From Haliotis rufescens (taxonomy: Eukaryota): a stretch of DNA of 64,000 bases. Positions 8,733 through 57,750 of the stretch are shown piece after piece. The stretch's first letter is position 1. Each line of letters starts with the position of its first letter. A program made the translations under genes and the position numbers. The notes under the pieces were generated by a model. That model was not told the origin of the DNA. It did not search any database and saw nothing but the letters and a program-made list of their open reading frames with translations. The DNA lies in assembly GCF_023055435.1 (NCBI RefSeq), contig NW_025963784.1, forward strand, positions 62,001 to 126,000, given 5' to 3'.

Positions 8733-9754
8733 GTAAGAGCAATATGGAAATGATGCTTGAGTTGACAGCCCAAACACATATATTGTATACGCTGTTTTGC
8801 AGAACAGTTTTGAAACCTCACGAAACCATATGAGACCTCGAAGAGGACAGTACCATCAGACATATATCAAATATCTATTTCAGCTAAAAAAGAATATGGA
8901 CAGAGCATTTCTACAAGGCCCCCGAAACAACATACTAAAAGTCCCAAATCAATCAATCAAATATGTGATGAGAGACCAACAGTGTATTGATATTCCATGT
9001 CTGTCCATGTCTTGGAGGTCATCTTGGATTTTTGGGCCAGTCAGTTAGTGTGACAAGTTTTATGCATATATGTCCCAGCACACTGTTTCAGAGATAAAAG
9101 CTTCCACAGCCTAACCTCATATTTAGGAAATGTGTCGGCCATCTTGAAATTGCCAGCCATCTTGATGTTTTGTAGATTTGTCAATAGTCGAAAACGATCA
9201 ATAGTTGTGAATATCTTTTTAGAAACATAATATGGCTATTTTGCAACACAACACATGCTGTTTTTCATCAAAACATTGAACCTCATCTGAAATAAGGAAA
9301 ATACTATTGACAGATGGTTGCCATATTGGATTATGTAAATTAGACATATTTCCCAAACTGGGATTGCTGGGGACTTTAAGTATGTTGTTTTGGGGACCTT
9401 GTAGAAATGCATTGTGATGAAATGAACTCTATTGCTATTTGTTCCAAGTGTAACCTTATTCTCCATGGGCTACATATGTCAATGGGGACTTTGCCAAAAC
9501 ACTGAAATTATGTTAACCAATATTTGAACTTAATTAGGCTTCACTGTGTATAATATTGAATGATTCGTTGGTTTACGTTTATGAGTATGTGGGGCTTCCA
9601 TTTAGTTTGGAGCCTTTTTCATTAGATACGAATTCGAAAGCGCTGGAGGCTTTTACATCTTGATTTTGTATTATATGTCACAATAGCATCACTATTTTGA
9701 TTAAGTCCTATTTTCTCTGAAATGTTGTGTCAAGTGCATGTGGTATTGTTTCAG

Positions 9755-10211
9755 GGTGACAACCGATGGCCAGTTTCTTATGAAATCATCGTCAGTTCCA
9801 CACGGAAGCTATAACAATGGCGGTTGGCTTACATCCACACCACCAACATCAACGTGTCCCGTGAACCACACATCAGAAGAATTGCCAGGGGTTTATGTTC
9901 CGAGTCAACTGGGACAAGCAGTTTCCACAGACAGACAAAGTGTTATGGAAGAGATCGCCTTGCAGTCATCCCAACCATATCATATAGACGGAAATCTTAA
10001 CAACCTCCTTACAGATCCTGCACACATGGAGATACGTTCACCCAATCAAAGATCAGAAACCATATATGGAATCTCAAGTCATGTTCCCACCTATGTCCAT
10101 GCTCCAGTAGTTGGTGACACATTGCCTAGTTCAGATACCACTAGTAATTCTGAGAATACCATCATTCACTACACTGAGTCTGGGGAAAAGATAGAGCTGC
10201 TGCAGCTCTAA
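9755..10211 (+). CDS. Copy 1 terminal exon (Ser/Thr/Pro-rich tail ending EKIELLQL)
   Basis: Acceptor ttgtttcag|G matches the phase-2 donor at 8732 (AG+G = Arg); ORF 9738-10211; paralog 37765-38122. Confidence 0.6.
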
Positions 10212-20519: not shown

Positions 20520-22246
20520 GTAAGCATCAGAACAATTGTCAGATATCAAGTAATTGGTGATTGAATAAATTATACATTTGAACTATGGGACAGAAATGTT
20601 ACCCGTAAGTGTATCTGGTTTGAACGTACAATGACTGATTGAAGGTGTCGCGTTTTCGGACCAATGAAGTGAAATTTTCCATTTACAATGAAAATATATT
20701 TACCTTCTCGTGTACCATGACACAGGCTTACTTGAATGGCTTGACGAACGACTACGTCGGGTTCGATTCTCAACATGACAATAACGTTTAAGTTTATGCA
20801 CTTGTGGTATGTGGATATAATAAATTAAACTGACTTACATTACGAGCAAAACATGTTAAAAACCTTGGTATCACGACTGCATAAAAAACAGTGGTTACAT
20901 TTATTATTCTGTTTCGTGTGAGAATTATACATCACCTGTGGTATGGGGTACTCTGTTAAAAGTTAAATTGTTACTAAATAGTAAAGCGGATGGTACGTTT
21001 CAAGACTTTCGGATTTTCGGACTACCGTCAAAAGGCTTATTGCAAGGAAATGAATGGCGTTACGAATAAGTTCTGATTACTGTTTGCAAACACTTGAATA
21101 AGTTTTTTTATCACTGTGAGGTGGAAGTATTATAAGCCTCCGGCTCGTGGTATTTAACATAGGGCGGGACGCATAAAACAACATGAACCCCTCGTGGTAC
21201 TGCTAAAACGAATTTATCTAACTGACATGTTTTAATTTGCACTTGTTAAAGAATTGAAGCAAATTCAAAATTGATAGAAAACAGATGTTCGATTGAGCTG
21301 AGGATAGCTTGTGCTATGTCACGCGACTATCACTGACTCGGAAAAAGCGTGCGGCTTTTTGCTTCGAAGCGGGGTTGAAGGGATTCATTCTCCCGCTCAA
21401 TGATCACGTGATGCCTGTCTTCTTCGTGGCGGGGTATAAGCGATTATTCTCCCGCTGAGACATTTATGTTCCACACAGGCAGAATGCATAGTATTTTATC
21501 AAGATCACGTGAACCAATCATATATCAACATTTTGAAATGGAGATATGATGGAACAGAACAGAGAATAATTAGAAATATCTGCCAAACGTAACGCAGATT
21601 TTTCGAATCTGACTTTATCATAAGTATGTGTTATTTGATGCAGTGTCAACTTAACTTGGAGGAAAACTATAGCGCAGATCATTCACGTTTACCACTTTGG
21701 CAGAACCTCCGATCATGGGTATGTTTCTAACAAACCAACAATCATAATCAGCACAAATCTGGGATTCGAACTCACAATCATAGGATTTCGTCACGCTGAT
21801 TATGTACAGCTATCTGCAACGCATCAGACTACTAAGACACCACCTTGAGTCGTGGAAACGAAGTGTTGGATATGTGACAAATCATTGTTGTTCGCATTAC
21901 CGAGTTCATCACGGTAGTGTATGTTCCTTCCGATTCAAGTTAACTGAAATATGATAAAACACAAGACTGCGATCTTTCATTATTCTTTGTATATTTCTGA
22001 GCGATATTTCACAGATCAAATGGAATCCAAAGCATTCCGAATTTAGTATTTCATATTATTACACAGGCAAGACAGGGAGCGGAAAAATCCCCCGATAGGT
22101 GTGGTAACTATATATATTTGCTATACATGAAGGCAAATCACATAGCCACTTTTACCTCGACACATCCGATCGCTGTACAGGAGGGGTGATATCGATATCA
22201 AAATATCATGATTCCACCATTTATTGTATGTTTATTATTACTGAGA

Positions 22247-22434
22247 TTACAGGGACTGCAGGATGTTGAGAATGTCCTCCCATTCAATCGTGCATCTCTC
22301 TTTACATGTCCAGAGTGCTTTGACCAGGACCAGATAGGTGGCCGAACTGCCATTCCACTGCTTCCATATCGTGAGCATAAATCAAGATCTGCATATACAT
22401 TGAACATTGGTGTGCAACTCTGCCCTGTTGAATA
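22247..22434 (-). pseudogene. 3' half of a type A death-domain exon, frameshifted
   Basis: QQGRVAHQCSMYMQIL then frameshift (gcataaatc vs gcataatc) to WKQWNGSSATYLVLVKALWTCKERCTIEWEDILNILQSL*; 5' half missing. Confidence 0.8.
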
Positions 22435-23227
22435 GAGCCTAGGCTATAGAGGAAAATACATTGTCTGTCTGTCTGTTCCAGTTGTTTGTATCTGCAACCC
22501 AACAATTAATTGAGGAGTTGATGGCTTCCGCATACCTAACAGTCATCATAAGTTGGGAGAGCGTTTTCGTATCTCACATGACTCCGGTGCAGGTGAGGAT
22601 TTGGCTGACAGCCGTTCCTTGATGAAACTAATACGTAACACCTGATCACGAACTGCACATGCCCCTTTGACAACCACGGTACAGTGTTTGAACCGATCTA
22701 GGTCCGAACATCCGACAAACGTCAACCATGCAAGACTATAAATATATGTCACTACACGGATTGACATACCGGCGTATATACATTGTAGCAGTGACTGGCA
22801 AAAGGTTCGTTGGAGTTATGATGTCACACTCAAGTGGTTTTCGTACACTATGACACCGATTGATGTTAAAATTAAAGGTAGGGTGCCGTTCCACAATATA
22901 TAATTGTCAATGCACGAGAATAAATAATTTTATGTATGAATGTACCACTGAAAATCAATGATGACACCAGGTGTTTACTTTTCGTATTTGAAAGTCAGAT
23001 TGAAACAAATTTCAATATCGAACGGAGCTGAAACAATGTTGATACAATGATTTTCAAGTAAGCAAACTCAGATCAACCAAATTTCAACATTAGAACAATG
23101 ACAATGCTGGGATACTTCAGTGGAGGTAGACATTATTATAAAGTATGAATATCTGTGTTAGTTTGGGTACAGGTGATTATGAAAATTGTAAAAACACATC
23201 CTCGGTGACGTGTAGTTCATTTTGTCA

Positions 23228-23393
23228 GGGGGCGGTCGGGTAGCCTAGTGGTTAAAGCGTTCGCTCGTCACGCCGAAGACCCGGGTTCGATTCCTGACAT
23301 GGGTACAATATGTGAAGCCATGTGCTGGTGTCCCCCGCCGTGATATTGCTGGAATATTGCTAAAAGCGGCGTAAAACCATACTCACTCACTCA
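23228..23393 (+). mobile_element. tRNA-derived SINE with (CTCA)n tail
   Basis: A box TAGCCTAGTGG, B box GGTTCGATTCC, non-tRNA body; absent at the paralogous site near 1920; second copy 45158-45329. Confidence 0.85.
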
Positions 23394-24000
23394 TTCTCTC
23401 AGTGAGCATAGGTTGAACCAGGCAATAAAGGTTTCTTACTCAGTAACAATTCTCTAGTCATGTCGCTAGACAACAACATTGTAATTTGTAATATTTTGTT
23501 ATATTTTGATCAAGACTTGATTTGAAACCACAATAAAGTATGTATATTAGGTGGATTCACCTGATCACGAAGACTGACGCTTTTTTGGATTGTTACTCGG
23601 ACATGTACAATGCTCATCTTGAAATATGGTCACACAGTGTACTGCAGAAATAATGCAGGGTAATAACAAATATCATCATTTAACGTCGTTTGGTAAAACG
23701 CGGCCGGGGCTCGAACCACCTATTTTCCTGGGCAGACTCGCTTTATTTTTCCCCGCAAGCCACACACAGAACAACAAACCAATAACAGAAAGTCCCCTGC
23801 GGTACAAGGAGAGACGTTTATGACGCCCTGAGGCGTTATAACAATACCAACACTGATACGTAGACAAATACAGGGTATATAAGAATATTCATGCTTGGAT
23901 GTAGTTCAGCATATAACCTTTTGTCATCTACAGGTTCAAGTGAACAACCGATTATTTATCACGCCTGTGTGACTCATGTGACTATTAATAACTTGACAAA

Positions 24001-27000
24001 ATGGCGCCTAATCCGAAACCACCCGAGCCTTACCGGACAGGGAGAACATCAGCCCTTAAAGTGGAGGAAATTGTTAACATTCTGAGGAGTCGGGATGAGA
24101 GCAAGACCATCCAGACTGCCCCCGCCACACCCCATGGAGGGGAGGTGTACCTCTATAAGATAACCTCGGGAATGAGAGAAGGTGAGGCAGTTGTGTTCAG
24201 GCTTAATATTACCATGAGTCAGGGATTAATACATATGAACAATGTTAATATTTCATGGAAAGCTGATATTATTTTTTACACAATTTGAATTCATTGGGGT
24301 TGTTAAGTACACATGACCAATGTCCTCAAAGCCACATTCATATACATGTACGTTATTAGTAATAGTCTGCTTGACGTCGGGGTCACCCTGCCCTGGTATC
24401 AGCTTCCTTGTACAGCCCTGTGATAACCGGTTTTATGTTTGCTAATATTGTTGACAAGTGATAGTCGTGCAAATAAGTGACTACGTGAATTAAGTTTATT
24501 TGTCTGTATCATCATCAAAACGACTTCTTTTACTTATGTTCTATCTTTGTTTTTCTATTTACTCTTTCCATCCCCTCTACAACAATTGTGTACTTAAATA
24601 ATGAACATTGTTTGATGTCAACTAGTAGAAAATCCATTGTTGGATTAATCAATATTGGCTAAACAAGAATCAAGCATCGTGTTGCATCTCAGAGAAGGAA
24701 AAAAGGACATGGTATTTATCATCACAACCTCTAATACAACATATTTATGCATGACCTTACAGCTGATTTGGCATTAAGGTGGGTTGATTTTAGAGTTATG
24801 TTACACTATTGACTGTTCACAGTTTTATTAATTAACATCTACATCACAGGTGACACACTAACACACAAAGAATTTTGAGGGATAGTTCATCTTCAGGATT
24901 ACAACATTGTTTGCAATGTTATGATATTAATTTCTATTTGCAGATATCTGGAAGGATGACAAATATCACTTCAGAAGTGATGGAACTCGGAAGCAGCCTG
25001 GCTTAAGTCCAGTCATAGTGAAGCAGTACCACAAGGCTTACACCGAGGACAAGGCGACAACAAGGGCCTTTGTCAGAGAAGCATCGTATCTGTACAACCA
25101 GCCTCTGAAACACGTCCTAGTGCAATATATCGGGGACCACACACAAGCACAGCCTGCTCCCCAACGCAAGAAGCGTGGTCAACAGACAGTTAATACCTCA
25201 GGTGACAGTAAATGTAGGAAAGTAGAATCAACTGGTAGAGCTGTGCAGTCGGGGGTCACGGAGAACACTAACTCCAACCTGGACCCTGAAGTTCATTCAT
25301 CACCGACAGAATTGGAAAATAACGGTAAATCAAACACTATTCTAGGTGTAACATTGAATGAAGCAAAGGTGTCAGAGACCGAAACAAAGAATGATCATGA
25401 CACAAATCAGAAACGCTGCAGGTCAGGAGATCATAGAAGTGATGATGACATTGAATATTTGGGTACAACGTCAGGCTCCCCTGTCAAGAAACCTCGTTTG
25501 CAGCCTCAGGTTGACAATGACAACACAGTTGCAACCTGTGTCACTAACACACCCTACGTTTATCTGTACACATTTCTAGAAGAAGTAGAAAGGAATCGTG
25601 ATGTGATAAAGGTCGTGCAACATGTCCTAGCATTATCTAGGTTCTGGAACAAGGACTGTACCAACAAAGGCAATCCGTGCTTGTCACTCATTGAAGAGGT
25701 CGACAAGAACTGGAATCTAGATGCAATTAAAGCAAGGAACTGGGTTAAATGTGCTGTTAATACTGACGGTCTGAGCTGGAACCAAGACGGTTCAGTTTAC
25801 ATAAAGCTCATCGCAGCAGTACTTGTTGGAGCATGTCATACCAGAACTGAAGTTTACGACTTTGTGAAAACACTGAAGGATCCTCCTTCACACCTGCAGC
25901 ATGTACAAGAGGACGTCCCCCTGTCACGTGACTGTACATACACAGTTGGCTGCTACACCATCAGAGGAGATGTTCTGTCTCGCCTGGAAACCAACGAGTG
26001 GCTGACAGATGAAGTAAGTAGTCCACCTGCAATATTTACACAATCACACAAACTACATGCCTAGTTAACCATCCAAGAAAATCATTTCATAGAGCATGGG
26101 AGGCTTTCGATTTCATCAAATGATGTTAGTATTAGATATAAACTGGAGGCGTGAGGGTGGTGAGTTGTTCAGTCACCTAATACTCATTGATAGTGCCTTG
26201 AGGTAGGCGTGGTGTCATGGTGCGTTGGATTAAATTATGAAGAAAGTAATGCACATCTTTGACGTTAACCACTTTGTTGATTCCCATGGTGAATCTGCAT
26301 AGCGAAATGCGGCGCCTTGGACCACTGAGACCCCATCTTAAGATTAATACAGCAACTTTTGGCGGTTTCTTCTTGTTACACCAGTATTAGTTAACTATCA
26401 ATTCATATAATGGTGCTAATTATCAACTCATTGCCATGCATCTCGATTCTGCAATGATGGCACTACTCACCTGCAATGGGCATTGTACACAAAATCTAGT
26501 ACATCACCAGTCAAATTGTCAGTCATTGCTAACAGCCGATATATTCTCTTCATGATGAATATGTGATGTGCAGCGGATCCTGCTTTGATTTGAAATTACA
26601 AGCGTTCCTTTTGAAGCAAACGCATTTGGCGATTAAACAGTATAATAAACATTCTAATAAATGAACTCTTTCCTGTCCAGATCATGGACATATACCTGCA
26701 CCTCCTGGAGAGAGAGTGGTGTTCCCGTGTCAGCTTCCACTGTCTGGTGCTGCCTACAGAGACAATCCTACTGTGGGAGGCAGGACAGTACACAGACAGA
26801 ATAAGGGGGAAAGATGTGAGTGACGTGAGATTTTTATATTTCTTATAATTCTTTCATTCTGAGTGTACCATTGCATGTCCACCCTACCAAGAACAAGGGC
26901 AAGACTCGAAAGATACTTTGTAATAATTGTATGTTTTTTGTGATAACATATGATTCGTCTATGCCATGATTGCGTATTCGGCATGCTAGAAGTTGTCACT

Positions 27001-30000
27001 TGCAATTGTGCGCACGAAGCGACCATATGCTGCAATGGGTTTCAATTGAGTCAAAGCCAGTAACCCCATTGATCATAATGCTATTCGTTTTCAATATGCA
27101 GTTACAAAAGCAGATATTGCACATGAACATATTCGTCTTGCTACATATTATTTTACGAAGTGAAAATCTGGTTGTCAGAGAGGGGTCTTTAGAAGTTCTA
27201 AGTTCCAAGATCATACCAATTCACTAATATCTCTGTTACTGCATCATATCCATCTTATGTGAAGCACGTGTTTCTTGATATATTGATCGTACACCGGAAA
27301 GGCATTTGTTGTGAACTTTCAGGAAAATTTGACAAACTACACGTGGATCTTAATGCCAGTGAACATGCCACGTAATCAACATTGGGTGCTACTGGTGGCT
27401 AATGTCAAGGATGGAACAGTGGGCGTGGTTAATTCTAAACCCTCCTTAGATGTGGAGGACAAGGTTGTACAACACTGGAGGTAGGTGGACAGAACAGTGG
27501 GCGTGGTCAATTCTAAACCCGCCTTATATGTAGAACACTCATTTGTACAACACTAGAGGTAGATAAAAAAAAAAGAAGAGGACGTGTGGCTGCACATTAT
27601 AAATGTTAAAAATAGCTATCCAATTTGAAATGTTGAAATGTTGATTTCTCAAAAACAAACATGAATGTAAATAAGATCCATCGAAAAATGTTCGATACAC
27701 CCACATTTGTAGCTTTTACTTTTGGGTAGAAGATATAGAACAACTTGTTCACAGGGTTACCCAGTTCCCCAAATGGGTACACTGTGTGAATGATTTAAAC
27801 GCCATAAATACAGTTATGTCACTCATTCATTTAAACCATAACATCTGTATTTGCTAACATAAAACCTAATTATGGACAAAGCAGGAGAGAACATCAGAAA
27901 TGCCAGGACCGGATATTTTAGGCACTGCTGTATTTACCTTCTGTTCTACCTTTACTTTAGCACCAGTCCACATGAGTTGAAGACTTTATTGCCATCGAGT
28001 AATATACATGTATTCCTCAGGCTCTTTGTAAACCACTTGAAATCTACGTCTAAGGAAAGGAGCAAGTCATGGATGAAGAAACAGTACCCGGGGATAGAAC
28101 AGTCAGATGGACACAGCTGTGGGATATTCGTTCTGATGGTAGGTTGGTTTGAAGCTATGTTTTTGATATGAAAGGCAACATGTGTCTCAAAAACCACGTA
28201 TGAACGATACCTTTTCATTTCTAACCTTCATATTCTCAGGCTGCTGATGCAATTTTGTCGGAGAAGTCTCCAGGCATCATGAGGAACTGTCACGTTGAGA
28301 AATACAGGCTGTATGTACTTCAGAGGATACTACAGTATGCCAAGGACAAGGGAGATATGCATGGTGGACGAAATCACATGATGGCAGTTGATCGACAGGG
28401 TAATGTCACAAACGAAATTCAAACTGTAACGCTGGAGACAAGAGATGTACTGGAAAATAGCTGTACAATGACAACAGAACAAGGAGGTCCAACTATTCAT
28501 GAAGAGGATGGACATGAAACACATGAAGGAACCGACTGTGCTATCGCCAGTGATGAAAGTATGCATTCTGGAGATCATTACTATGTTACGTAATTGTAAG
28601 GCGTTACGCAAGGTATTATATTTTAGATCTACATGTGCAATGTTGTACACTGCTTTCTTACAAACGTTATTTGTTTTCACAGATACAGAGGACTATCCAT
28701 GTTTGGATCAGCACCTGTTGCATAAGCAGAAGATGGCATGCTTGTTAGTGGTTGCTTTGGCGGAGAATAACCTGGAGGAGAGGATGCTATGGGCAGGGTC
28801 TGACACAGGGACTCGCGTGGAAAGAGAAACCTACAAAAAATATATTGTTTGGGCACTCAAGGTTTTTGACATCAATGAAGAAGAATACACTGAAAATATG
28901 ATGAAACCTATTTTATCCCAATTGGCGGGATGCTGTCTCCATCATGAATCAGGGTCATATAGAATAAGAAATCATGAAGTAGCAATAAAGCTAAGAGAAA
29001 TACTGCTCAGTGATGTGGGACAGTTGGTTGAAAGGATGGATCTCGAGTTCATATTTCGTTATGTGACATTTAGAGGTGATCCAACCGAAGAGGAACAACT
29101 AGATGTGCCTTTTAAAATCGAATTGAAACATGATGATCTGCATATTGTAGCAAGGCGGTTTGTTGCAGCTGTACATGACAGAAAGTTTGCCTTTGTGTGC
29201 ATGCATTCACTATTCCAGGTAGAGACATTTGTTAATATGGTTTGGGAGAATCTCTTGCATAATCTGAACAAGGACAGATCTGAACTGTTGAAAGTATTGT
29301 CAAAAAATGACATTATATATGGATATTCCTTTCTGTTTTGGGCGAGCGTCACAGGCAACTCGAATTTGCTGAAGAAAGCATTGAACAGTGTTCAGTTTAA
29401 GGTAAAGAACAGACAGGAAGCCTTGTTTGGAAGTTGCTTTGGGAGTAGTTTGGCCAACTTCGATTACTTGTGTTCCAAAAATAACTGGAAGTTGGATATG
29501 TTGTGTATGACGCTACCCGAGCTCCCAAGACCTCTTATCATCAAACTGCAGTTGGCAGTTGTAGATGATCTGAGAGTAAAGTTTGGTAAATGTTCACTTT
29601 TGGACATTGCCTGTATGGGTGGGTTGTCTACAGTGGCTTCCAGACTGTCACATTTGATGAAGACGAGCCAGAACAAGAACAGTTCAAGAAAGAATACTTA
29701 TGTACATTATGCAGCCATGTGTCAAAAGGGCAAAGATATCATGGATATAGTTATAAAGAAGGGACAACGTAGCATCAATATCATAGGTCCTGAAGGATCA
29801 ACACCTTTTCATTACTCATGTGCAGTTGGAAATGTTAGCAATGTAAGCTACCTGTTACAGGAAGTACTGGACATTGGTAAGCCAAACAAGAAGGGTGAAA
29901 CTGGACTTCATTTGGCATGTATATATGGGAATGCAGAAGTTGTTAAAATGTTATTACAGAACAAGGGAATAAGTCATGTGACAGACAATTATGGCAGCAC

Positions 30001-33000
30001 ACCTCTACATGATGCAGCCTGGCAAGGACATAGGGAGGTTGTGGAGGTGTTATTACAGAACAAGGCAAATGTGGATGAGAAAGATAAGAAAGGCCGCACA
30101 CCTCTACATCGTGCAGCCTCCCAGGGACATAGGGAGGTTGTGGAGGTGTTATTACAGAACAAGGCAAATATGAATGAGAAACGAATTGATGGCAGCACAC
30201 CTCTACATGATGCAGCCAACAAGGGACACAGGGAGGTTGTGGAGGTGTTATTACAGAACAAGGCAAATGTGAATGAGAAACGTAATGATGGCAACACACC
30301 TCTACATCTTGCAGCCGTCCAGGACCATTGGGAGGTTGTGGAGGTGTTATTCCAGAACAAGGCAAATGTGAATGAGAAACGGAATGATGGCAGCACACCT
30401 CTACATGATGCAGCCTACCAGGGACATAGGAAGGTTGTGGAGGTGTTATTAAAGAAGAAGGCAAATGTGGATGAGAAAGATAAGGAAGGCCGCACACCTC
30501 TACATGATGCAGCCTACCAGGGACATAGGAAGATTGTGGAGGTGTTATTACAGAACAAGGCAAATGTGAATGAGAAACGGAATGATGGCAGCACACCTCT
30601 ACATGATGCAGCTTACCAGGGACATAGGAAGGTTGTGGAGGTGTTATTACAGAACAAGGCAAATGTGGATGAGAAAGATAAGGAAGGCCGCACACCTCTA
30701 CATGATGCAGCCGACCATGGACATAGGAAGGTTGTTGAGGTGTTATTACAGAACAAGGCAAATGTGAATGAGAAACGGAATGATGGCCGCACACCTCTAC
30801 ATGATGCAGCTTACCATGGACATAGGAAGGTTGTGGAGGTGTTATTACAGAACAAGGAAAATGTGGATGAGAAAGATAAGAAAGGCCGCACACCTCTACA
30901 TGATGCAGCCTCCCAGGGACATAGGAAGGTTGTGGAGGTGTTATTACAGAACAAGGCAAATGTGAATGAGAAACGGAATGATGGCAGCACACCTCTACAT
31001 GATGCAGCCTACCATGGACATAGGAAGGTTGTGGAGGTGTTATTACAGAACCAGGCAAATGTGGATGAGAAACGTAGTGATGGCAACACACCTCTACATC
31101 ATGCAGCCTACCATGGACAAAGGGAGGTTGTGGAGGTGTTATTACAGAACAAGGCAAATGTGGATGAGAAAGATAAGAAAGGCCGCACACCTCTACATCG
31201 TGCAGCCTCCCAGGGACATAGGGAGTTTGTGGAGGTGTTATTACAGAACAAGACAAATGTGCATGAGCAACGTCAAGATGACAGCACACCTCTACATGAT
31301 GCAGCCTACCAGGGACACAGGGAGGTTGTGGAGGTGTTATTACAGAACAAGGCAAATGTGAATGAGAAACGTAATGATGGCAACACACCTCTACATGATG
31401 CAGCCTACCAGGGACATAGGAAGGTTCTGGAGGTGTTATTACAGAACAAGGCAAATGTGAATGAGAAACGGAATGATGGCAACACACCTCTACATGATGC
31501 AGCCTACCAGGGACATAGGAAGGTTGTGGAGGTGTTATTACAGAACAAGGCAAATGTGGATGAGAAAGATAAGGAAGGCAGCACACCTCTACATGATGCA
31601 GCCGACCAGGGACATAGGAAGGTTGTGGAGGTGTTATTACAGAACAAGGCAAATGTGAATGAGAAACGGAATGATGGCAGCACACCTCTACATGATGCAG
31701 CCTACCATGGACATAGGAAGGTTGTTGAGGTGTTATTACAGAACAAGGCAAATTTGAATGAGAAACGTAATGATATCAACACACCTCTACATCTTGCAGC
31801 CTGGCAGGGACATTGGGAGGTTGTGGAGGTGTTATTAAAGAACAAGGCAAATGTGGATGAGAAAGATAAGAAAGGCCGCACACCTCTACATCGTGCAGCC
31901 TACCAGGGACATAGGGAGGTTGTGGAGGTGATATTACAGAACAAGGCAAATGTGAATGAGAAACGTAATGATGGCAGCTCACCTCTAAATGATGCAGCCT
32001 ACCAGGGACATAGGGAGGTTGTGGAGGTGTTATTACAGAACAAGGCAAATGTGGATGAGAAAGATAAGAAAGGCCACACACCTCTACATCGTGCAGCCTC
32101 CCAGGGACATAGGGAGGTTGTGGAGGTGTTATTACAGAACAAGGCAAATGTGAATGAGAAACGTAATGATGGCAACACACCTCTGCATGTTGCAGCCTGG
32201 CAGGGACATAGGGAGGTTGTGGAGGTGTTATTACAGAACAAGGCAAATGTGGATGAAAAACGTAATTATGGCAGCACACCTCTACATATTGCAGCCTACC
32301 AGGGACATAGGGAGGTTGTGGAGGTGTTATTACAGAACAAGGCAAATGTGGATGAAAAACGTGATGATGGCCCTACACCTCTACATGAGGCAGCTTACCA
32401 GGGACATAGGGAGGTTGTGGAGATGATATTACAGAACAAGTCAAATGTGAATGAGAAACATCAAGACGGCAGCACACCTCTACATCTTGCAGCCTGGCAT
32501 GGACATTCGGAGGTTGTGGAGGTGTTATTACAGAACAAGGCAAATGTGGATGAGAAAGATAAGGAAGGCCGCACACCTCTACATGATGCAGCCTGGCAGG
32601 GACACAGGGAGATTGTGGAGGTGTTATTACAGAACAAGGAAAATGTGGATGAGAAAGATAAGGAAGGCTGCACACCTCTACATCGTGCAGCCTCCCAGGG
32701 ACATAGAGAGGTTGTGGAGGTGTTATTACAGAACAAGGCAAATATGAATGAGAAACGGAATGATGGCAGCACACCTCTACTTGATGCAGCCTGGCAGGGA
32801 CATAGGGAGGTTGTGGAGGTGTTATTACAGAACAAGGCAAATGTGAATGAGAAACGAAATGATGGCAACACACCTCTACATCTTGCAGCCGTCCAGGAAC
32901 ATTGGGAGGTTGTGGAGGTGTTATTACAGAACAAGGCAAATGTGAATGAGAAACGGAATGATGGCAGCACACCTCTACATAATGCAGCCTACCAGGGACA

Positions 33001-36000
33001 AAGGAAGGTTGTGGAGGTGTTATTAAAGAACAAGGCAAATGTGGATGAGAAAGATAAGGAAGGCCGCACACCTCTACATGATGCAGCCGACCAGGGACAT
33101 AGGAAGGTTGTGGAGGTGTTATTACAGAACAAGGCAAATGTGAATGAGAAACGGAATGATGGCAGCACACCTCTACATGATGCAGCTCACCAGGGACATA
33201 GGAAGGTTGTGGAGGTGTTATTACAGAACAAGGCAAATTTGGATGAGAAAGATAAGAAAGGCCGTACACCTCTACATGATGCAGCCTCCCAGGGACATAG
33301 GAAGGTTTTGGAGGTGTTATTACAGAACAAGGCAAATGTGAATGAGAAACGTAATGATGGCAGCACACCTCTACATGATGCAGCCTCCCAGGGACATAGC
33401 AAGGTTGTGGAGGTGTTATTACAGAACCAGGCAAATGTGGATGAGAAACGTAATGATGGGAACACACCTCTACATCTTGCAGCCTGGCAGGGACATAGGG
33501 AGGTTGTGGAGGTGTTATTACAGAACAAGACAAATGTGCATGAGCAACGTCAAGATGACAGCACACCTCTACATGAGGCAGCCTACCAGGGACACAGGGA
33601 GGTTGTGGAGGTGATATTACAGAACAAGTCGAATGTGAATGAGAAACATCAAGAAGGCAGCACACCTCTACATCTTGCAGCCTGGCATGGACATTGGGAG
33701 GTTGTGGAGGTGTTATTACAGAACAAGGCAAATGTGGATGAGAAAGATAAGGAAGGCCGCACACCTCTACATGATGCAGCCTGGCAGGGACACAGGGAGG
33801 TTGTGGAGGTGTTATTACAGAACAAGGAAAATGTGGATGAGAAAGATAAGGAAGGCAGCACACCTCTACATCGTGGAGCCTCCCAGGGACATAGAGAGGT
33901 TGTGGAGGTGTTATTACAGAACAAGGCAAATATGAATGAGAAACGGAATGATGGCAGCACACCTCTACATGATGCAGCCAACAAGGGACACAGGGAGGTT
34001 GTGGAGGTGTTATTACAGAACAAGGCAAATGTGAATGAGAAACGTAATGATGGCAACACACCTCTACATCTTGCAGCCGTCCAGGACCATTGGGAGGTTG
34101 TGGAGGTCTTATTACAGAACGAGGCAAATGTGAATGAGAAACGGAATGATGGCAGCACACCTCTACATAATGCAGCCTACCAGGGAGAAAGGAAGGTTGT
34201 GGAGGTGTTATTAAAGAACAAGGCAAATGTGGATGAGAAAGATAAGGAAGGCAGCACACCTCTACATGATGCAGCCAACCAGGGAGATAGGAAGGTTGTG
34301 GAGGTGTTATTACAGAACAAGGCAAATGTGGATGAGAAACGGAATGATGGCAGCACACCTCTACATGATGCAGCTTACCAGGGACATAGGAAGGTTGTGG
34401 AGGTGTTATTACAGAACAAGGCAAATGTGGATGAGAAAGATAAGGAAGGCCGCACACCTCTACATGATGCAGCCGACCAGGGACATTGGAAGGTTGTGGA
34501 GGTGTTATTACAGAACAAGGCAAATGTGGATGAGAAAGATAAGGAAGGCCGCACACCTCTACATGATGCAGCCGACCAGGGACATTGGAAGGTTGTGGAG
34601 GTGTTATTACAGAACCAGGCAAATGTGGATGAGAAACGTAATGATGGCAACACACCTCTACATCATGCAGCCTACCGTGGACAAACGGAGGTTGTGGAGG
34701 TGTTATTACAGAACAAGGCAAATGTGCATCGGCAACGTCAAGATGACAGCACACCTCTACATGATGCAGCCTACCAGGGACACAGGGAGGTTGTGGAGGT
34801 GTTATTACAGAACAAGGCAAATGTGAATGAGAAACGTAATGATGGCAGCACACCTCTACATGATGCAGCCTACCAGGGACATAGGAAGGTTGTGGAGGTG
34901 TTATTACAGAACAAGGCAAATGTGAATGAGAAACGGAATGATGGCAACACACCTCTACATGATGCAGCCTACCAGGGACATAGGAAGGTTGTGGAGGTGT
35001 TATTACAGAACAAGGAAAATGTGGATGAGAAAGATATGGAAGGCCGTACACCTCTACATGATGCAGCCGACCAGGGACATAGGAAGGTTGTGGAGATGTT
35101 ATTACAGAACAAGGCAAATGTGAATGAGAAACGGAATGATGGCAGCACACCTCTACATGATGCAGCCTACCATGGACATAGGAAGGTTGTGGAGGTGTTA
35201 TTACAGAACAAGGCAAATGTGAATGAGAAACGTAATGATAGCAACACACATCTACATCTTGCAGCCTGGCAGGGACATAGGGAGGTTGTGGAGGTGTTAT
35301 TACAGAACAATGCAAATGTGGATGAGAAAGATAAGAAAGGCCGCACACCTCTACATCGTGCAGCCTCCCAGGGACATAGGGAGGTTGTGAAGGTGTTATT
35401 ACAGAACAAGGCAAATGTGAATGAGAAACGGAATGATGGCAGCACACCTCTACATGATGCAGCCTACCAGGGACATAGGGAGGTTGTGGAGGTGTTATTA
35501 CAGAACAAGGCAAATGTGGATGAGAAAGATAAGAAAGGCCGCACACCTCTACATCTTGCAGCCTCCCAGGGACATAGGGAGGTTGTGGAGGTGTTATTAC
35601 AGAACAAGGCAAATGTGGATGAGAAACGGAATGATGGCAGCACACCTCTACATGATGCAGCCTACCAGGGACATAGGGAGGTTGTGGAGGTGTTATTACA
35701 GAACAAGGCAAATGTGAATGAGAAACGTTATAATGGCAGCACACCTCTACATGATGCAGCCTCGCAGGGACATAGGGAGGTTGTGGAGGTGTTATTACAG
35801 AACAAGGCAAATGTGGATGAAAAACGTAATGATGGCAGCACACCTCTACATCTTGCAGCCTACCAGGGACATAGGGAGGTTGTGGAGGTGTTATTACAGG
35901 ACAAGGCAAATATGGATGAAAAACGTGATGATGGCAACACACCTCTACATGAGGCAGCCTACCAGGGACGTAGGGAGGTTGTGGAGGTGATATTACAGAA

Positions 36001-36610
36001 CAAGTCAAATGTGAATGAGAAACATCAAGACGGCAGCACACCTCTACATCTTGCAGCCTGGCATGGACATTGGGAGGTTGTGGAGGTGTTATTACAGAAC
36101 AAGGCAATTGTGGATGGGAAAGATAAGGAAGGCCGCACACCTCTACATGATGCAGCCTGGCAGGGACATAGGAAGGTTGTGGAGGTGTTATTACAGAACA
36201 AGGCAAATATGGATGAGAAAGATAAGGAAGGTTGCACACCTCTACATGATGCAGCCTGGCAGGGACACAGGGAGGTTGTGGAGGTGTTATTACAGAACAA
36301 GGCAAATGTGGATGTGAATGATAAGGAAGGCAGCACACCTCTACATGATGCAGCCTGGCAGGGACATAGGAAGGTTGTGGAGGTGTTATTACAGAACAAG
36401 GCAAATGTGGATGAGAAAGATAAGGAAGGCAGCACACCTCTACATGATGCAGCCTGGCAGGGACACAGGGAGGTTGTGGAGGTGTTATTACAGAACAAGG
36501 CAAATGTGGATGAGAAAGATAAGAAAGGCTGCACACCTCTACATGATGCAGCCTGGCAGGGATACATGGAGGTTGTGGAGGTGTTATTACAGAACAACGC
36601 AAATGTTTAA
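24001..36610 (+). CDS. Copy 2 gene: CG-1-like domain + Ulp1/C48-like protease + STAND-associated helical region + about 70 ankyrin repeats, about 3300 aa (exons 24001-24181, 24944-26013, 26681-26815, 27323-27480, 28021-28138, 28240-28558, 28683-36610)
   Basis: All junctions are GT-AG with matching phases (1,0,0,2,0,1), giving a 9909-nt open frame. Motifs WLTDEIMDIYL, LMPVN..HWVLLV..VVNS, QSDGHSCG. An alternative phase-1 donor exists at 28399. Confidence 0.8.
27414..27562 (+). repeat. 78-bp tandem duplication of an exon end and its splice donor
   Basis: GAACAGTGGGCGTGG..TGTACAACACT(G/A)GAGGTAG starts at 27414 and 27492; donors at 27481 and 27559. Confidence 0.85.
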
Positions 36611-36616
36611 GAGAAA
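29984..36616 (+). repeat. Coding tandem array, 67 x 99 bp ankyrin units
   Basis: 6633 bp = 67 x 99 with no net indels; higher-order periods of 12, 35 and 36 units. Confidence 0.95.
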
Positions 36617-37764
36617 GACGATAAAGAAGAAACTGCTTTACAAAAAGCAGAGGCACAACATCACGATGATATTGCAAGGATTATAACTGAGGCAACAAAT
36701 ATACATGACCTGACAACCAATCATGGTACAATTATAGATAGGTAAGAGCAATGTGGAAATGATGCTTGAGTTGACAGCCCAAACACATATATTGTATACG
36801 CTGTTTTGCATAACAGTTTTGAAACCTCACGAAACCATATGATACCTCGAAGAGGACTGTACCATCAGACAATAAATCAAAATATCTATTTCAGCTAAAT
36901 AAAGAATATAGACAGAGCATTTCTACAAGACCCCAAAACAACATACTAAAAGTCCCAAATCAATCAATCAAATATGTCATGAGAGAACAACAGTGTATTG
37001 ATATTCCATGTCTGACCATGTCTTGGAGGTCATCTTGGAATTTTGGGCCAGTCAGTTAGTGTGACAAGTTTTATGCATATAAGTCCCAGCACACTGTTTC
37101 AGAGATAAAAGCTTCAACAGTCTAAACTCATATTTAGGAAATGTGTCGGCCATCTTGAAATTGCCGGCCATCTTGATGTTTTGTAGATTTGTCAATAGTC
37201 GAAAACGATCAATACGTGTGAATATCTTTTTAGAAACGTAATATGACTATTTTGCAACACAACACATGCTGTTTTTCATCAAAACATTGAACCTCATCTG
37301 AAATAAGGAAAATACTATTGAGAGATGGTTTCCATATTGAATTATGTAAATTAGACATATTTCCCAAACTGGGATTGCTTGGGACTTTAAGTATGTTGTT
37401 TTGGGGACCTTGTAGAGATGCATTTTGGTGAAATGAACTCTATTGCTATTTGTTCCAAGTGAAACCTTATTTTCCATGGGCTACATATGTCAGTGGGGAC
37501 TTTGCAAAAACATTGAAATTATGTTAACCAATATTTTAACTGGATTAGGCTTCACTGTCTATAATAATGAATGATTCGTTGGTTTACGTTTATGAGTATG
37601 TGGGGCTTCCATTTAGTTGGAGTCTTTTTCATTAGATACGAATTCGAAAGCGCTGGAGGCTTTTACATCTTGATTTTGTATTATATGTCACAATAGCATC
37701 ACTATTTTGATTAAGTCCTATTTTCTCTGAAATGTTGTGTCAAGTGCATGTGGTATTGTTTCAG

Positions 37765-38122
37765 GGTGACAACCGATGGCCAGTTTCTTATAAAATCATC
37801 GTCAGTTCCATACGGAAGCTATAACAATGGCGGTTGGCTTACATCCAACCCACCAACATCAACTTGTCCCGTGAAGCACACATCAGGAGAATTGCCAGGG
37901 GTTTATGTTCCGAGTCAACTGGGACAAGCAGTTTCCACAGACAGACAAAGTGTTATGGAAGAGATCGCCTTGCAGTCATCCCAACCATATCATATAGACG
38001 GAAATCTTAACAACCTCCATACAGATCCTGCACACATGGAGATACGTTCACCAAATCAAAGATCAGAAACCATATATGGAAACTCAAGTCATGTTCCCAC
38101 TTGTTATTATGGTGTCCAGTGA
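37765..38122 (+). pseudogene. Copy 2 ancestral terminal exon, downstream of a premature stop and shortened by a 145-bp deletion
   Basis: In phase with the donor at 36741; lacks the equivalent of 10091-10235. Confidence 0.55.
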
Positions 38123-47990: not shown

Positions 47991-48744
47991 CTAAGTCGAT
48001 GGTGATTGGAGAATGTTTAGTATGGCATCAATTTCGAGCGTACATCTACCTCTGCATCTCCACAACGCTCTGACGAGCACAAGGCCAGTGGCAGATCTGC
48101 CATTCCTCTCCTTCCACTTGGTGAGCATGTGTAGGGTCTGCATATAAAGTGAATTATGGTGTGAAACTTTGCCTTGTTCGATCACCACAAGATTGAGTCC
48201 AAGTTCGATTCCAATAGATTCAAACCCGATCCCAATATGATTTGCCACCAGGCTGACACCTTTCTGAGAAACAGGGATTCTCAGTCTTTCCTCATTTACA
48301 GGGCCTACAAAACAAATGTGAATGAAAATTATAGATGAGTCTTGAGTTTTGAGTAATTTTGTTTTTGACTTTTCAAAATTATATTTTAACAAACACTTTA
48401 CAAATCAGAACAGATACGGAAAGTATGTTGCGAGACATAGTACATCTTAATATATGCAGAGGAGAATACATATTCTCTCCACGTCTACAGTATAGCATAT
48501 GTGTACTTAAGATATTATTCGAAGTTCATATTGTATATTTAACATAATCAAATTGATCAAGATGAAAAGGACATATTGAATGACATTAAATAAACGAACC
48601 TGTCAATGTGACCAATGGATTATATGAACGGATCATCTGGTTGTGTGGCTGGTGAAGTCTCTGGAAGGGAGATGTTTATACCATCACATGTCATGTATAA
48701 AATTAAATGTTGCAAGCTTATGTCATATATACTTTTCGTGCTGT

Positions 48745-49284: not shown

Positions 49285-49462
49285 NNNNNNNNNNNNNNNN
49301 NNNNNNNNNNNNNNNNNNNNNNNNNNNNNNNNNNNNNNNNNNNNNNNNNNNNNNNNNNNNNNNNNNNNNNNNNNNNNNNNNNNNNNNNNNNNNNNNNNNN
49401 NNNNNNNNNNNNNNNNNNNNNNNNNNNNNNNNNNNNNNNNNNNNNNNNNNNNNNNNNNNNNN
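49285..49462. other. Assembly gap
   Basis: Run of N. Confidence 1.
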
Positions 49463-52151: not shown

Positions 52152-53297
52152 TTACACAGACACAGTGGACGGTCCCTGAAGGATGTTGAGAATGTCCTCC
52201 CACTCAATGGTACACCTGTCATTGCATCTCCACAGTGCTCTGACAAGGACAAGGATGGTTGCAGTTCTCCCGTTCTTCTCCTTCCACTTTGTAAGCATGT
52301 GCACAACTTGCATGTATAGTGAATAAGGGTGTGCAAACGTGACTTGTTCGATAACCACGAGAGTAAGTCCAAGTTCGATGCCAACAGACTCGAACCCGAT
52401 CCCGATGTGACTTGCAACAAGACTGAGATCTCTTCCAGATACTGGAGTATCCAACATCTCGTCATTTACAGCATATGCTTGGTTCCAGTGTGTTGGCCCT
52501 ACAACATTAAACTCACAATAAACTACCAATAGACTTGTGTACATTTTGTTTGATAGATGATGTAACAACATTCGGTTCGCTTTCATTAATCCAAATTATT
52601 TCACTAAACAAAGAAAAATACGATACATACATACAGTAATTTAAAAAGAAATTAATGGGGTACACATAGAACTAAACTTCCTAAAATAGAATTATAAGAC
52701 AAACAGATTGTTTAAATAAAGAACTAAAGGATGACTATGCTTGTCATAAGAGGCGACCAGCGGGATCGGGTGGTCAGGCTCGCTGACATGGTTGATGCAT
52801 GTTATTGTATCCCAATTGCGTAAATCGATACTCATGATGTCAATCAGTGGATTGTCTGGTCCAGATTCGATTATTTACAGACCACCGTCATATAGCTGGA
52901 ATATTGCTGCGTGCGACGTTAAACAAAAAACAAGCAAACCAAATAACAAACAATGTAATTTAACGTACATGTAACTCTCTCTGTCAGATTGGGTTCATTT
53001 TGGCAGTTTATCGAGTTCTCTGTGTTGGACAGCCTCTGGAATCGAATAAACACAGTTTAAAACACGATTGATAGCTACGCCATCACAGCAATAAAACAAT
53101 AAAGATAATCTTACATAAACTAAACAAGACAATGCAATGCCAAATTCACGTGAACATGTACACACGCATTACACATATTGACACGCTAAAGTTCGAATAG
53201 GGAAAGCATGTGAAATATGCCTATATACATATGTATACATAACATCTTGACCCACCTGATATCGGGATATTGGCCAGCATGAAACAATATTACCCAT
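52152..53297 (-). CDS. Acylated death-domain-only protein, type B, 151 aa (exons 53297-53256, 53035-52969, 52498-52152)
   Basis: MGNIVSCWPISRYQ / RLSNTENSINCQNEPNLTERVT / WPTHWNQAYAVNDEMLDTPVSGRDLSLVASHIG..; open frame, GT-AG sites. Confidence 0.82.
52730..52950 (+). mobile_element. 5'-truncated SINE in DD intron 2 (duplicate 63618-63840; related fragments about 50863-51030 and 61533-61700)
   Basis: GACTATGCTTGTC(A/G)TAAGAGGCGAC..CCGTCATATAGCTGGAATATTGCTG plus (AAAC)n tail. Confidence 0.7.
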
Positions 53298-57602: not shown

Positions 57603-57750
57603 NNNNNNNNNNNNNNNNNNNNNNNNNNNNNNNNNNNNNNNNNNNNNNNNNNNNNNNNNNNNNNNNNNNNNNNNNNNNNNNNNNNNNNNNNNNNNNNNNN
57701 NNNNNNNNNNNNNNNNNNNNNNNNNNNNNNNNNNNNNNNNNNNNNNNNNN
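57603..57750. other. Assembly gap
   Basis: Run of N. Confidence 1.

What the first reader, a model, noticed from the sequence alone, without database searches (positions are those of the whole stretch)
24001..36610. Chimeric 3300-aa protein: CG-1-like DNA-binding domain + Ulp1-type protease + STAND-like helical region + about 70 ankyrins
The ORF track hides this; seven exons splice in phase. The N-terminus follows the CAMTA CG-1 pattern (EIxxIL, PxxPxxGxxxLY, WxxDxYxF, FxRxxxxL, HxLVxY) and is followed by basic NLS-like motifs. Exons 2-6 give a C48 fold (WLTDEIM, HW, QxDGxSCG). The 28683-29700 region resembles, from recall, the winged-helix/helical segment after the NTPase in molluscan nSTAND3-ANK proteins, but I see no Walker A. 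Inference: the NTPase of a STAND receptor was replaced by a DNA-binding/protease module, possibly transposon-derived, since Ulp1 domains are known cargo of Mutator-like elements.
Basis: partly seen in the sequence, partly recalled or inferred. Interest (0 to 1): 0.85.

Follow-up and report, generated by a model that had tools for sequence, protein, structure and literature searches.

The report
Giant abalone protease-ankyrin fusion gene
A seven-exon red-abalone gene encodes a 3,302-residue protein that joins a CAMTA-like (CG-1) domain, a SUMO-type protease, the winged-helix remnant of an immune-type STAND receptor that has lost its ATPase, and about 70 near-identical ankyrin repeats; it belongs to a tandem gene family found so far only in abalones and named only "uncharacterized".

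Summary
Seven GT-AG exons (24001-36610, + strand) join in phase into 9,906 nt, or 3,302 codons. NCBI models of paralogues and orthologues in three Haliotis species use the same exon joins.

- **Protease:** Peptidase_C48 is solid. Pfam scores it above cut-off, the fold matches SENP1/2 and Ulp1, and His, Gln, Cys and both clamp Trp are kept. The triad Asp is Asn.
- **N-terminus:** it is probably a diverged CG-1 domain. One paralogue passes Pfam's cut-off, and both halves match collinearly, exon by exon. The reciprocal test failed.
- **"Helical region":** it is homologous to the segment after the NTPase in this genome's own nSTAND3-ankyrin proteins (hhalign 99.6%, E 5.5e-25). It models as a winged helix plus degenerate ankyrins. 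No NTPase relic lies anywhere in the window.
- **Ankyrin array:** 67 perfectly phased 33-residue repeats follow.

This supports an NTPase-less derivative of a STAND receptor. Transposon origin has no support.

This copy carries a premature stop that removes a roughly 190-residue tail. No RNA evidence could be obtained. The family has at least 25 tandem loci interleaved with Death-domain genes. First readers noted the same architecture in two other windows of this genome (s1-810260, s1-816368).

Function is inferred: a nuclear Ubl protease steered by a variable ankyrin scaffold.

The parts
24001..24181 (+). Exon 1: start codon and the first third of the CG-1-like domain. It ends in phase 1 at a GTGAGG donor.
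   Evidence: The sequence was read. Pfam CG-1 matches profile positions 6-43 at 13.2 bits, E 0.07. Exon 1 of distant paralogues scores 15.5 and 18.5 bits on profile 5-45. Paralogues appear.
24944..26013 (+). Exon 2. It holds the rest of the CG-1-like domain (to about 25135). A disordered basic linker with NLS-like QRKKRG and VKKPR follows (about 25138-25557). Then come a helical pre-domain and the start of C48, ending WLTDE.
   Evidence: Splice sites were read. The AF2 model of paralogue P0152 shows residues 126-265 at pLDDT 23-29 and residues 266-590 folded. At least 20 intact paralogous copies exist.
26681..26815 (+). Exon 3: C48 N-terminal helices (IMDIYLHLLE...).
   Evidence: The sequence was read. 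tblastn of P0001 residues 417-472 matches here.
27323..27480 (+). Exon 4: C48 core. The catalytic His codon is at 27380-27382. Asn sits at the triad Asp position, at 27431-27433.
   Evidence: Pfam Peptidase_C48 scores 25.5 bits, above the 20.7 cut-off. The SENP1 (2iyc) alignment places His on His and Asn on Asp550.
28021..28138 (+). Exon 5: C48 oxyanion Gln (28100-28102) and catalytic Cys (28118-28120), in the motif QSDGHSCG.
   Evidence: The sequence was read. Gln and Cys are invariant across five diverged family members.
28240..28558 (+). Exon 6: last C48 helix, then a disordered acidic linker. The donor is A|GTATGC, phase 1.
   Evidence: The sequence was read. The GT and AG of introns 4-6 are conserved in 8 of 8 paralogues, and the exons are free of indels. 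P0001 and P0152 carry the same ...SDE-N-T.DYPCL join.
28683..29030 (+). Start of exon 7: winged-helix domain, homologous to the post-NTPase module of nSTAND3 proteins.
   Evidence: hhalign gives 99.6%, E 5.5e-25. In the AF2 model, pLDDT is mostly 73-93 per 10-residue block after a weak first block. VIA gives Z 6.4-6.8 against the C-terminal winged helices of Cdc6/Orc1 and against ArsR/SmtB.
29031..29948 (+). Helical linker plus about four degenerate ankyrin-like repeats and the first irregular ankyrin repeats.
   Evidence: AF2 model residues 150-280 match ankyrin domains at Z 7-8.2. Pfam finds Ank at residues 377-471 of the exon 7 piece.
29949..36607 (+). Array of 67 phased 33-residue ankyrin repeats.
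   Evidence: TRF gives period 99 nt, 67.3 copies, 88% matches and 0 indels. Variation is concentrated at repeat positions 2, 3, 4, 6, 11 and 14.
36608..36610 (+). TAA stop, premature relative to the family. P0001 has Tyr at this position, and the other paralogue in the window has Asp.
   Evidence: The same stop is present in the duplicate copy on C594, locus L033.
36611..36739 (+). Untranslated relic of the end of exon 7 (EKDDKEETALQKAEAQHHDD...).
   Evidence: It is 84% identical to the P0001 tail across the stop.
37763..38122 (+). Relic of the family's last coding exon (C-terminal tail). Its 3' end carries a further lesion.
   Evidence: tblastn gives 85% identity to the P0001 tail. The end diverges and stops early.

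Best explanation
This is a real multi-exon gene of the red abalone, Haliotis rufescens. It is one member of a tandemly amplified family that has so far been retrieved only from Haliotis.

**What the protein contains, in order**
1. A diverged CG-1 (CAMTA-type) domain.
2. A disordered basic linker with NLS-like motifs.
3. A SENP/Ulp1-type cysteine protease with His, Gln, Cys and both clamp Trp kept, and Asn in place of the triad Asp.
4. An acidic linker.
5. A winged-helix plus degenerate-ankyrin module that descends from the post-NTPase part of nSTAND3-ankyrin (NLR-like) receptors.
6. 67 homogenised ankyrin repeats whose differences sit on the canonical binding face.

The STAND NTPase itself is gone.

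**Most likely origin (inferred).** An exon carrying the WHD and ankyrin part of an nSTAND3-ankyrin gene was joined to a CG-1-like/C48 gene.

**Most likely working (inferred).**
- The protein is nuclear and DNA- or chromatin-associated.
- Its protease removes SUMO or another di-Gly Ubl from proteins captured by the ankyrin scaffold.
- It does this without a nucleotide-driven oligomerisation switch.
- The setting is probably immune or cell-death related, given its descent and its interleaving with Death-domain genes.

This particular copy is the longest in its subgroup and has lost its C-terminal tail to a nonsense codon.

The confidence given covers the gene and domain architecture and the STAND descent. 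The functional part alone is about 0.4.
For: **Gene model**
- Six GT-AG introns are all in phase, giving 3,302 codons.
- NCBI proteins carry identical joins: P0001 from H. cracherodii and P0152 from H. rufescens.
- The order ex1, ex2, helical region recurs at constant spacing in at least 25 loci. It also recurs in loci at 21-31% identity on C27, C24, C545 and C594 at 5.3 and 21.9 Mb.
- Splice dinucleotides are conserved in 8 of 8 paralogues, and the exons are free of indels.

**C48**
- Pfam scores are 25.5 bits on exon 4, 42.6 on P0001 and 52-63 on distant members.
- The SENP1 alignment shows His, Gln and Cys kept and Asp replaced by Asn.
- P0021 keeps the Asp.
- Foldseek gives SENP1/2 and Ulp1 at E about 1e-6, TM 0.66-0.80.

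**CG-1**
- P0016 scores 25.0 bits, above the GA of 23.5, covering profile positions 5-114 of 116.
- P0001, P0021 and P0033 score 16.9-20.3 bits.
- Separate exons hit the correct halves of the profile.
- In a scan of the whole genome, the only hits after CAMTA itself are this family, apart from one lone 16.8-bit match at E 4.7.

**STAND descent**
- hhalign gives 99.6%, E 5.5e-25.
- phmmer gives 1e-10 to 2e-5, and BLASTP gives 1e-10.
- The partner proteins carry Pfam nSTAND3.
- The module has a winged-helix fold.
- No NTPase relic is present.

**Constraint and context**
- dN/dS is 0.31-0.78 over the WHD region.
- Death-domain ORFs are co-amplified with the family.
Against:
- NCBI also models short proteins of 579-662 aa covering the N-terminal half only. 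One of these is isoform X2 of a gene whose X1 isoform is fused. Protease-only products may therefore exist.
- No NCBI model among those retrieved matches this exact locus.
- The window's own CG-1 scores are below Pfam's cut-off.
- A family HMM does not hit the abalone CAMTA exons.
- AF2 gives low confidence for the N-terminal domain.
- The triad Asp is Asn, so activity is unproven.
- This copy has a premature stop and a damaged last exon.
- Several paralogues are pseudogenes.
- The winged-helix structural matches are modest, at Z below 8.
- Every functional step (nuclear location, DNA binding, Ubl specificity, immune role) is inferred.
Confidence: 0.72

Rival explanations
1. There are two separate genes: a CG-1-like/C48 gene (exons 1-6) and a downstream ankyrin gene that starts inside the large ORF. 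The fusion is then an artefact of gene prediction.
For: - NCBI holds short models of 579-662 aa without ankyrin repeats.
- It also holds an ankyrin-only partial model, P0002.
- The donor of intron 6 (GTATGC) is only moderate.
- There is no RNA evidence.
Against: - The phase-compatible junction is conserved in 8 of 8 paralogues.
- NCBI fuses the two halves at five diverged loci in three species.
- Intron 6 is only 124 nt, and the sequence before the acceptor in the large ORF's frame looks non-coding.
- The architecture is kept at 21-31% identity on other contigs.
Confidence: 0.08
2. This copy is a young pseudogene, or a decaying duplicate, in a fast-turnover cluster, and it makes no functional protein.
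For: - It has a premature TAA where relatives continue for about 190 residues.
- Its last exon carries a further lesion.
- Neighbouring paralogues carry stops, deletions and frameshifts.
- dN/dS reaches 0.78 in one comparison.
Against: - 3,302 codons are open, including a single exon of 2,641 codons.
- All catalytic residues and splice sites are intact.
- The duplicate on C594 is identical in the WHD region.
- Most dN/dS values are 0.3-0.6.
Confidence: 0.12
3. The CG-1-like/C48 module is cargo captured from a DNA transposon, in the way Ulp1 domains ride in plant Mutator-like elements. The family then spread by transposition.
For: - By established knowledge, Ulp1 domains travel with some transposons.
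- The Atlas structure search listed plant C48 clusters that carry transposase or PMD domains, but only at TM of 0.3 or less.
Against: - No transposase domain appears in any exon.
- There are no inverted repeats of 25 nt or more around exons 1-6.
- Copies lie in head-to-tail tandem units together with Death-domain genes on three contigs, not dispersed.
Confidence: 0.06
4. The N-terminal domain is not a CG-1 homologue. It is an unrelated small domain whose motif pattern mimics CG-1 by chance.
For: - The window's own score is below the cut-off.
- The family HMM misses the CAMTA exons.
- AF2 confidence is low for residues 56-125.
- No solved CG-1 structure was available for comparison.
Against: - CG-1 is the only Pfam family hit in this region, in 10 separate scans.
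- The hits are always collinear and cover profile positions 5-114.
- One hit is above the cut-off.
- A scan of the whole 1.33 Gb genome finds CAMTA and then this family, apart from one lone 16.8-bit match at E 4.7.
Confidence: 0.15

Closest known systems
nSTAND3-ankyrin proteins (Pfam PF20720 NTPase plus ankyrin repeats; NLR-like, hugely expanded in this genome)
   Same: - The module between NTPase and ankyrin array (winged helix plus degenerate ankyrins) is homologous (hhalign 99.6%).
- Both have a long ankyrin array in one large exon.
- Both show lineage-specific expansion.
   Different: - This protein has no P-loop NTPase at all.
- Its N-terminus is a CG-1-like domain plus a C48 protease.
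- A nucleotide-driven switch is therefore impossible.
SENP/Ulp1 SUMO-specific proteases (MEROPS C48, clan CE)
   Same: - The fold matches (Foldseek E 1e-6, TM up to 0.80).
- His, Gln, Cys and both clamp Trp are kept.
   Different: - The triad Asp is Asn in most family members.
- The protease is embedded in a 3,302-residue protein with a CG-1-like domain and about 70 ankyrin repeats.
- Its substrate is unknown.
CAMTA transcription factors (CG-1, TIG, ankyrin, IQ)
   Same: - A CG-1-type domain sits at the extreme N-terminus and is followed by NLS-like basic motifs.
- Ankyrin repeats lie further downstream.
   Different: - No TIG or IQ domains were found.
- The CG-1 domain is highly diverged, scoring 13-25 bits.
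- The ankyrin repeats descend from STAND-type proteins, not from CAMTA.
- The true abalone CAMTA exons lie elsewhere, on C212.
Fungal NACHT-WHD_GPIID-ankyrin NLRs
   Same: A winged helix followed by an ankyrin array. This comes from the Atlas feature search at score 0.90 and is a lead only.
   Different: - No sequence-level match was shown.
- The fungal proteins keep their NTPase.

Membership tests
Peptidase_C48 (Ulp1/SENP) | Match to the family profile above the curated cut-off | tested here: met
   Exon 4 alone scores 25.5 bits against a cut-off of 20.7. P0001 scores 42.6, and distant members score 52-63 bits.
Peptidase_C48 (Ulp1/SENP) | Catalytic His and Cys, the oxyanion Gln, and the Trp clamp | tested here: met
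   The alignment to SENP1 (2iyc) places His on His533, Gln on Gln597 and Cys on Cys603. The Trp of WL.DE and the Trp of HW are both kept.
Peptidase_C48 (Ulp1/SENP) | Asp as the third member of the triad | tested here: inconclusive
   Asn replaces Asp in this copy and in 4 of 5 diverged members, while P0021 keeps Asp. By general knowledge, Asn serves this role in papain-type triads. Activity was not tested.
Peptidase_C48 (Ulp1/SENP) | Clan CE fold | tested here: met
   Foldseek on the AF2 model of paralogue P0152 gives SENP1/2 and Ulp1 at E 1e-6 to 4e-6, TM 0.66-0.80.
CG-1 domain (PF03859) | Profile match above the curated cut-off of 23.5 bits | tested here: inconclusive
   - Window exon 1 scores 13.2 bits, and window exon 2 scores nothing.
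- Paralogue P0016 scores 25.0 bits.
- Other members score 16.9-21.8 bits.
CG-1 domain (PF03859) | Collinear coverage of the whole domain | tested here: met
   Profile positions 5-114 of 116 are covered in P0016, P0001, P0021 and P0033. Exon 1 hits positions 5-45 and exon 2 hits positions 47-114.
CG-1 domain (PF03859) | Reciprocal recognition of true CAMTA CG-1 by a profile of this family | tested here: not met
   hmmsearch of a six-member family HMM against the six-frame abalone CAMTA loci L022-L027 found nothing at E below 10. CAMTA is split there into exons of 48 and 27 residues, which weakens the test.
CAMTA transcription factors | TIG and IQ domains after CG-1 | tested here: not met
   No TIG or IQ hit appears in any exon or in P0001.
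STAND NTPases (nSTAND3, PF20720) | P-loop NTPase domain with Walker A and B | tested here: not met
   An HMM of the NTPase part of 19 own-genome nSTAND3 proteins finds nothing in six frames of the window; the best hit is E 5.4. Pfam finds no NTPase either.
STAND NTPases (nSTAND3, PF20720) | Post-NTPase winged-helix/helical module followed by repeats | tested here: met
   hhalign gives 99.6%, E 5.5e-25, over 244 columns. The fold is a winged helix at Z 6.4-6.8.
Ankyrin repeat proteins | Tandem 33-residue repeats that match the Ank profiles | tested here: met
   Pfam Ank families match. There are 67 phased repeats.
Transposon-borne Ulp1 (for example Mutator-like elements) | Transposase and terminal inverted repeats around the module | tested here: not met
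   No transposase domain was found. There are no inverted repeats of 25 nt or more in 21000-29000. The copies are tandem, not dispersed.

The most novel reading that the evidence does not exclude
The family would be a new kind of animal innate-immune or cell-death sensor-effector.
- It is a STAND receptor stripped of its ATPase.
- Ligand capture by a hypervariable, rapidly resizing ankyrin array would directly position or gate a SUMO/Ubl protease on chromatin, through the first CG-1 domain known outside CAMTA.
- It would signal together with the co-amplified Death-domain genes.
Probability: 0.2. Interest if true: 0.75.

Novelty: new variant of a known kind. Interest (0 to 1): 0.55.

Why it matters
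**Modular evolution of a receptor.** The case shows a concrete, datable example of modular evolution in an invertebrate NLR-like repertoire. The sensor half of a STAND receptor (winged helix plus ankyrin array) is reused without its ATPase. It is wired to a Ubl protease and a CAMTA-type domain.

**What follows if the protease is active.**
- The family offers a natural system in which an ankyrin scaffold of up to 67 repeats, resembling a designed ankyrin binder, chooses substrates for deconjugation.
- It also gives a testable link between SUMO/Ubl removal and mollusc immunity. Abalone disease resistance has been tied loosely to ankyrin-repeat genes (PMC12627906).

**Annotation.** The genes are currently "uncharacterized" in RefSeq and are modelled inconsistently, as fused, N-terminal half only, or ankyrin only.

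Tried and rejected
- **Joined protein.** Exons were searched by reference, and natural NCBI proteins stood in for the whole.
- **Representative search.** The search with the helical region was swamped by ankyrin hits, because my query kept about 90 ankyrin-like residues at its end. Only P0002, P0016, P0021, P0033 and P0069 were informative. Absence outside Haliotis is therefore not shown.
- **Foldseek on the helical model.** It found nothing below E 1e-3.
- **Exon 4 against PDB.** It gave nothing.
- **Reciprocal CG-1 test.** It was negative.
- **AF2 of the N-terminal domain.** Confidence was low, so no fold comparison was attempted for it.
- **Logan contig P0159.** It covers one exon only and says nothing about splicing.
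- **Literature.** Searches found no paper on a CG-1/C48/ankyrin architecture.
- **Complex prediction.** It was not used, because no binding claim is made.
Full report
**Source and setting.**
- The window is G000:C6:62001-126000 of a 1.33 Gb assembly.
- NCBI proteins of Haliotis rufescens sit on contigs whose lengths equal those of this assembly: 54,236,743 for C594, 751,927 for C27 and 1,025,956 for C6. The genome is therefore red abalone.
- GC and GC skew rise over 28-36 kb, where the large ORF lies.

**Observation.**
- I read the splice sites directly.
  - ex1 24001-24181
  - ex2 24944-26013
  - ex3 26681-26815
  - ex4 27323-27480
  - ex5 28021-28138
  - ex6 28240-28558
  - ex7 28683-36607, with a TAA stop at 36608-36610
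- All introns are GT-AG and all phases fit. The sum is 9,906 nt, or 3,302 codons.
- The bacterial-style ORF list shows only pieces, plus one ORF of 2,703 codons.
Exons were searched by reference, and natural database proteins served for whole-protein tests.

**Is it one gene?**
- The NCBI model P0001 (H. cracherodii, 2,079 aa, 93% identical in the helical part) and P0152 (H. rufescens paralogue, 924 aa) carry exactly the same six joins. These include ...SDE-N-T.DYPCL between the protease half and the ankyrin exon.
- In the genome itself, exon 1, exon 2 and the helical region recur in that order and spacing at about 25-30 loci on C6, C594 (41.6-41.9 Mb) and C72.
- At 21-31% identity they recur again on C27, C24, C545 and C594 at 5.3 and 21.9 Mb. 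NCBI again models fused proteins there: P0016 at 3,458 aa, and P0033 at 3,808 aa with six isoforms. The fused relatives P0021 (H. cracherodii) and P0069 (H. rubra) come from other species.
- The GT and AG of introns 4-6 are kept in 8 of 8 paralogues. The exons have no indels, while intron 4 does.
- Against this, NCBI also holds short models of 579-662 aa covering the N-terminal half only. One is isoform X2 of a gene whose X1 isoform is fused.
- None of the retrieved models is this exact locus.

**Protease.**
- Exon 4 alone passes Pfam's Peptidase_C48 cut-off. Whole proteins score 42-63 bits.
- The HMMER alignment to SENP1 (2iyc) puts the family's His, Gln and Cys on His533, Gln597 and Cys603. 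An Asn falls on Asp550.
- Among five diverged members, one keeps Asp and four have Asn. His, Gln, Cys and both Trp are invariant.
- An AF2 model of P0152 folds residues 266-590 well. Foldseek matches it to SENP1/2 and Ulp1 at E about 1e-6, TM 0.66-0.80.
- Activity is plausible but untested.

**N-terminal domain.**
- CG-1 is the only Pfam family that ever hits this region, and the hits are always collinear.
  - Window exon 1: 13.2 bits on profile positions 6-43.
  - Exon 1 of distant loci: 15.5 and 18.5 bits.
  - Exon 2 of the subgroup-2 locus L017: 19.7-21.8 bits on positions 47-114.
  - Whole proteins: 16.9-20.3 bits. P0016 reaches 25.0 bits, above the 23.5 cut-off, over positions 5-114 of 116.
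- A six-frame scan of the whole genome with PF03859 finds the true CAMTA exons on C212. After them the remaining hits are this family, apart from one lone 16.8-bit match at E 4.7 on C24.
- The reverse test failed. A family HMM does not find the CAMTA exons.
- AF2 is unsure of residues 56-125.
- I rate homology at about 85%. DNA binding is inferred.

**Helical region.**
- Taken without its ankyrin end (28685-29599), it hits own-genome ORFs that begin with a Walker A and carry Pfam nSTAND3. BLASTP gives 1e-10, and phmmer gives 1e-10 to 2e-5.
- I compared a profile of 14 family members with a profile of 19 nSTAND3 ORFs.
  - hhalign gave 99.6%, E 5.5e-25, over 244 columns.
  - Query positions 13-269 aligned to template positions 246-494.
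  - The template is numbered from 25 residues before the Walker A, so the match starts just after the NTPase.
- AF2 on an alignment of 26 sequences gave pLDDT 76.8 and pTM 0.75.
  - Residues 1-115 form a winged helix. It matches the C-terminal winged helices of Cdc6/Orc1 and ArsR/SmtB repressors at Z 6.4-6.8.
  - Residues 150-280 are ankyrin-like, at Z 7-8.2.
  - These Z values are modest.
- An HMM of the NTPase half finds nothing in any frame of the window.
- The exon therefore starts where the NTPase of its relatives ends. This fits loss or replacement of the NTPase.
- The direction of the change is inferred from numbers: at least 351 nSTAND3 candidates in the genome, against a few dozen copies of this family.

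**Ankyrin array.**
- TRF gives period 99 nt, 67.3 copies, 88% matches and no indels.
- There are 67 phased repeats with 77% mean identity. Variation is concentrated at repeat positions 2, 3, 4, 6, 11 and 14.
- By general knowledge of ankyrin binders, those positions form the hairpin and first-helix face.
- Open frames of the ankyrin exon range from 431 to 2,745 codons among paralogues. Repeat number therefore changes quickly.

**State of this copy.**
- The TAA at 36608-36610 stands where P0001 has Tyr. Conserved coding sequence runs on to 36739 and resumes at 37763.
- The last exon has a further lesion.
- The duplicate on C594 has the same stop.
- The remaining 3,302 codons are intact.
- dN/dS over the winged-helix region against eight paralogues is 0.31-0.78.

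**Context.**
- Minus-strand ORFs at 47991-48392 and 52152-52586 carry Death domains, both above Pfam's cut-off.
- All but three of their 150 scored genome matches lie in the same three contigs, interleaved with this family.
- Abalone genomes are reported to have haplotype-variable chromosomes enriched in ankyrin genes (PMC12627906).
- nSTAND clades were introduced in work on conflict systems (PMC8195603).

**Transposon idea.**
- No transposase domain was found.
- There are no inverted repeats around exons 1-6.
- The copies are tandem. I find no support for a transposon origin.

**Verdict.**
- The architecture and its descent from a STAND receptor are supported.
- Transposon origin is not supported, and function remains inferred.
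- The genes are already in RefSeq as "uncharacterized". I found no paper on this architecture.
- All relatives retrieved are from Haliotis, but my broad search was swamped by ankyrin hits. A wider distribution is therefore not excluded.

Noticed in passing
window 3202-10211 (+): A second family member sits here. It has exon 1 (3202-3384), exon 2 (4522-5595), an ankyrin ORF (6287-8677) and a tail exon (9753-10208). It lacks exons 3-6 and all but the last 47 residues of the helical region, and it has a frameshift in the tail. NCBI models its front half as 437-662 aa proteins (P0164, P0167, P0168).
   Followed up: partly
window 47991-48392 (-) and 52152-52586 (-): Small ORFs carry Pfam Death domains at 25.7 and 27.2 bits, against a cut-off of 22.6. 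All but three of their 150 scored genome matches lie on C6, C594 (41.58-41.92 Mb) and C72. They are interleaved with the protease-ankyrin genes on the opposite strand, and many carry stops.
   Followed up: partly
L017 + L054 (C594:41921500-41941499); L055 (C6:577000-586999): A second subgroup sits in the same cluster, about 33% identical in exon 2. It has CG-1-like and C48 exons, and an ankyrin ORF of 690-820 codons about 3.3 kb downstream. It has no winged-helix or helical region. Whether the parts are spliced together is unknown.
   Followed up: partly
G000:C212:299555-806118 (L022-L027): The true CAMTA-type CG-1 exons (64 bits) occur seven times on one contig, at spacings of about 70-150 kb. 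This is either a tandem amplification of the CAMTA 5' region or an assembly artefact.
   Followed up: no
whole genome G000: At least 351 first-look candidates exist for the nSTAND3 NTPase domain, of which only 21 were scored. Many sit in single large exons followed by ankyrin repeats.
   Followed up: no
C6:12543-126000 versus C594:41675050-41763300: The start of contig C6 mirrors C594 gene for gene. The helical region is 100% identical, the premature stop is the same, and one ankyrin repeat differs (2,712 versus 2,745 open codons). C6 is either a haplotig or a very recent segmental duplication.
   Followed up: partly
window 29943-36677 (-): Long antisense ORFs (602 and 1,434 codons) overlap the ankyrin array. 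They are a by-product of the repeat's composition and period, not separate genes.
   Followed up: no
window 49285-49462 and 57603-57750: Two runs of N, which are gaps or masked stretches. I left them untouched.
   Followed up: no
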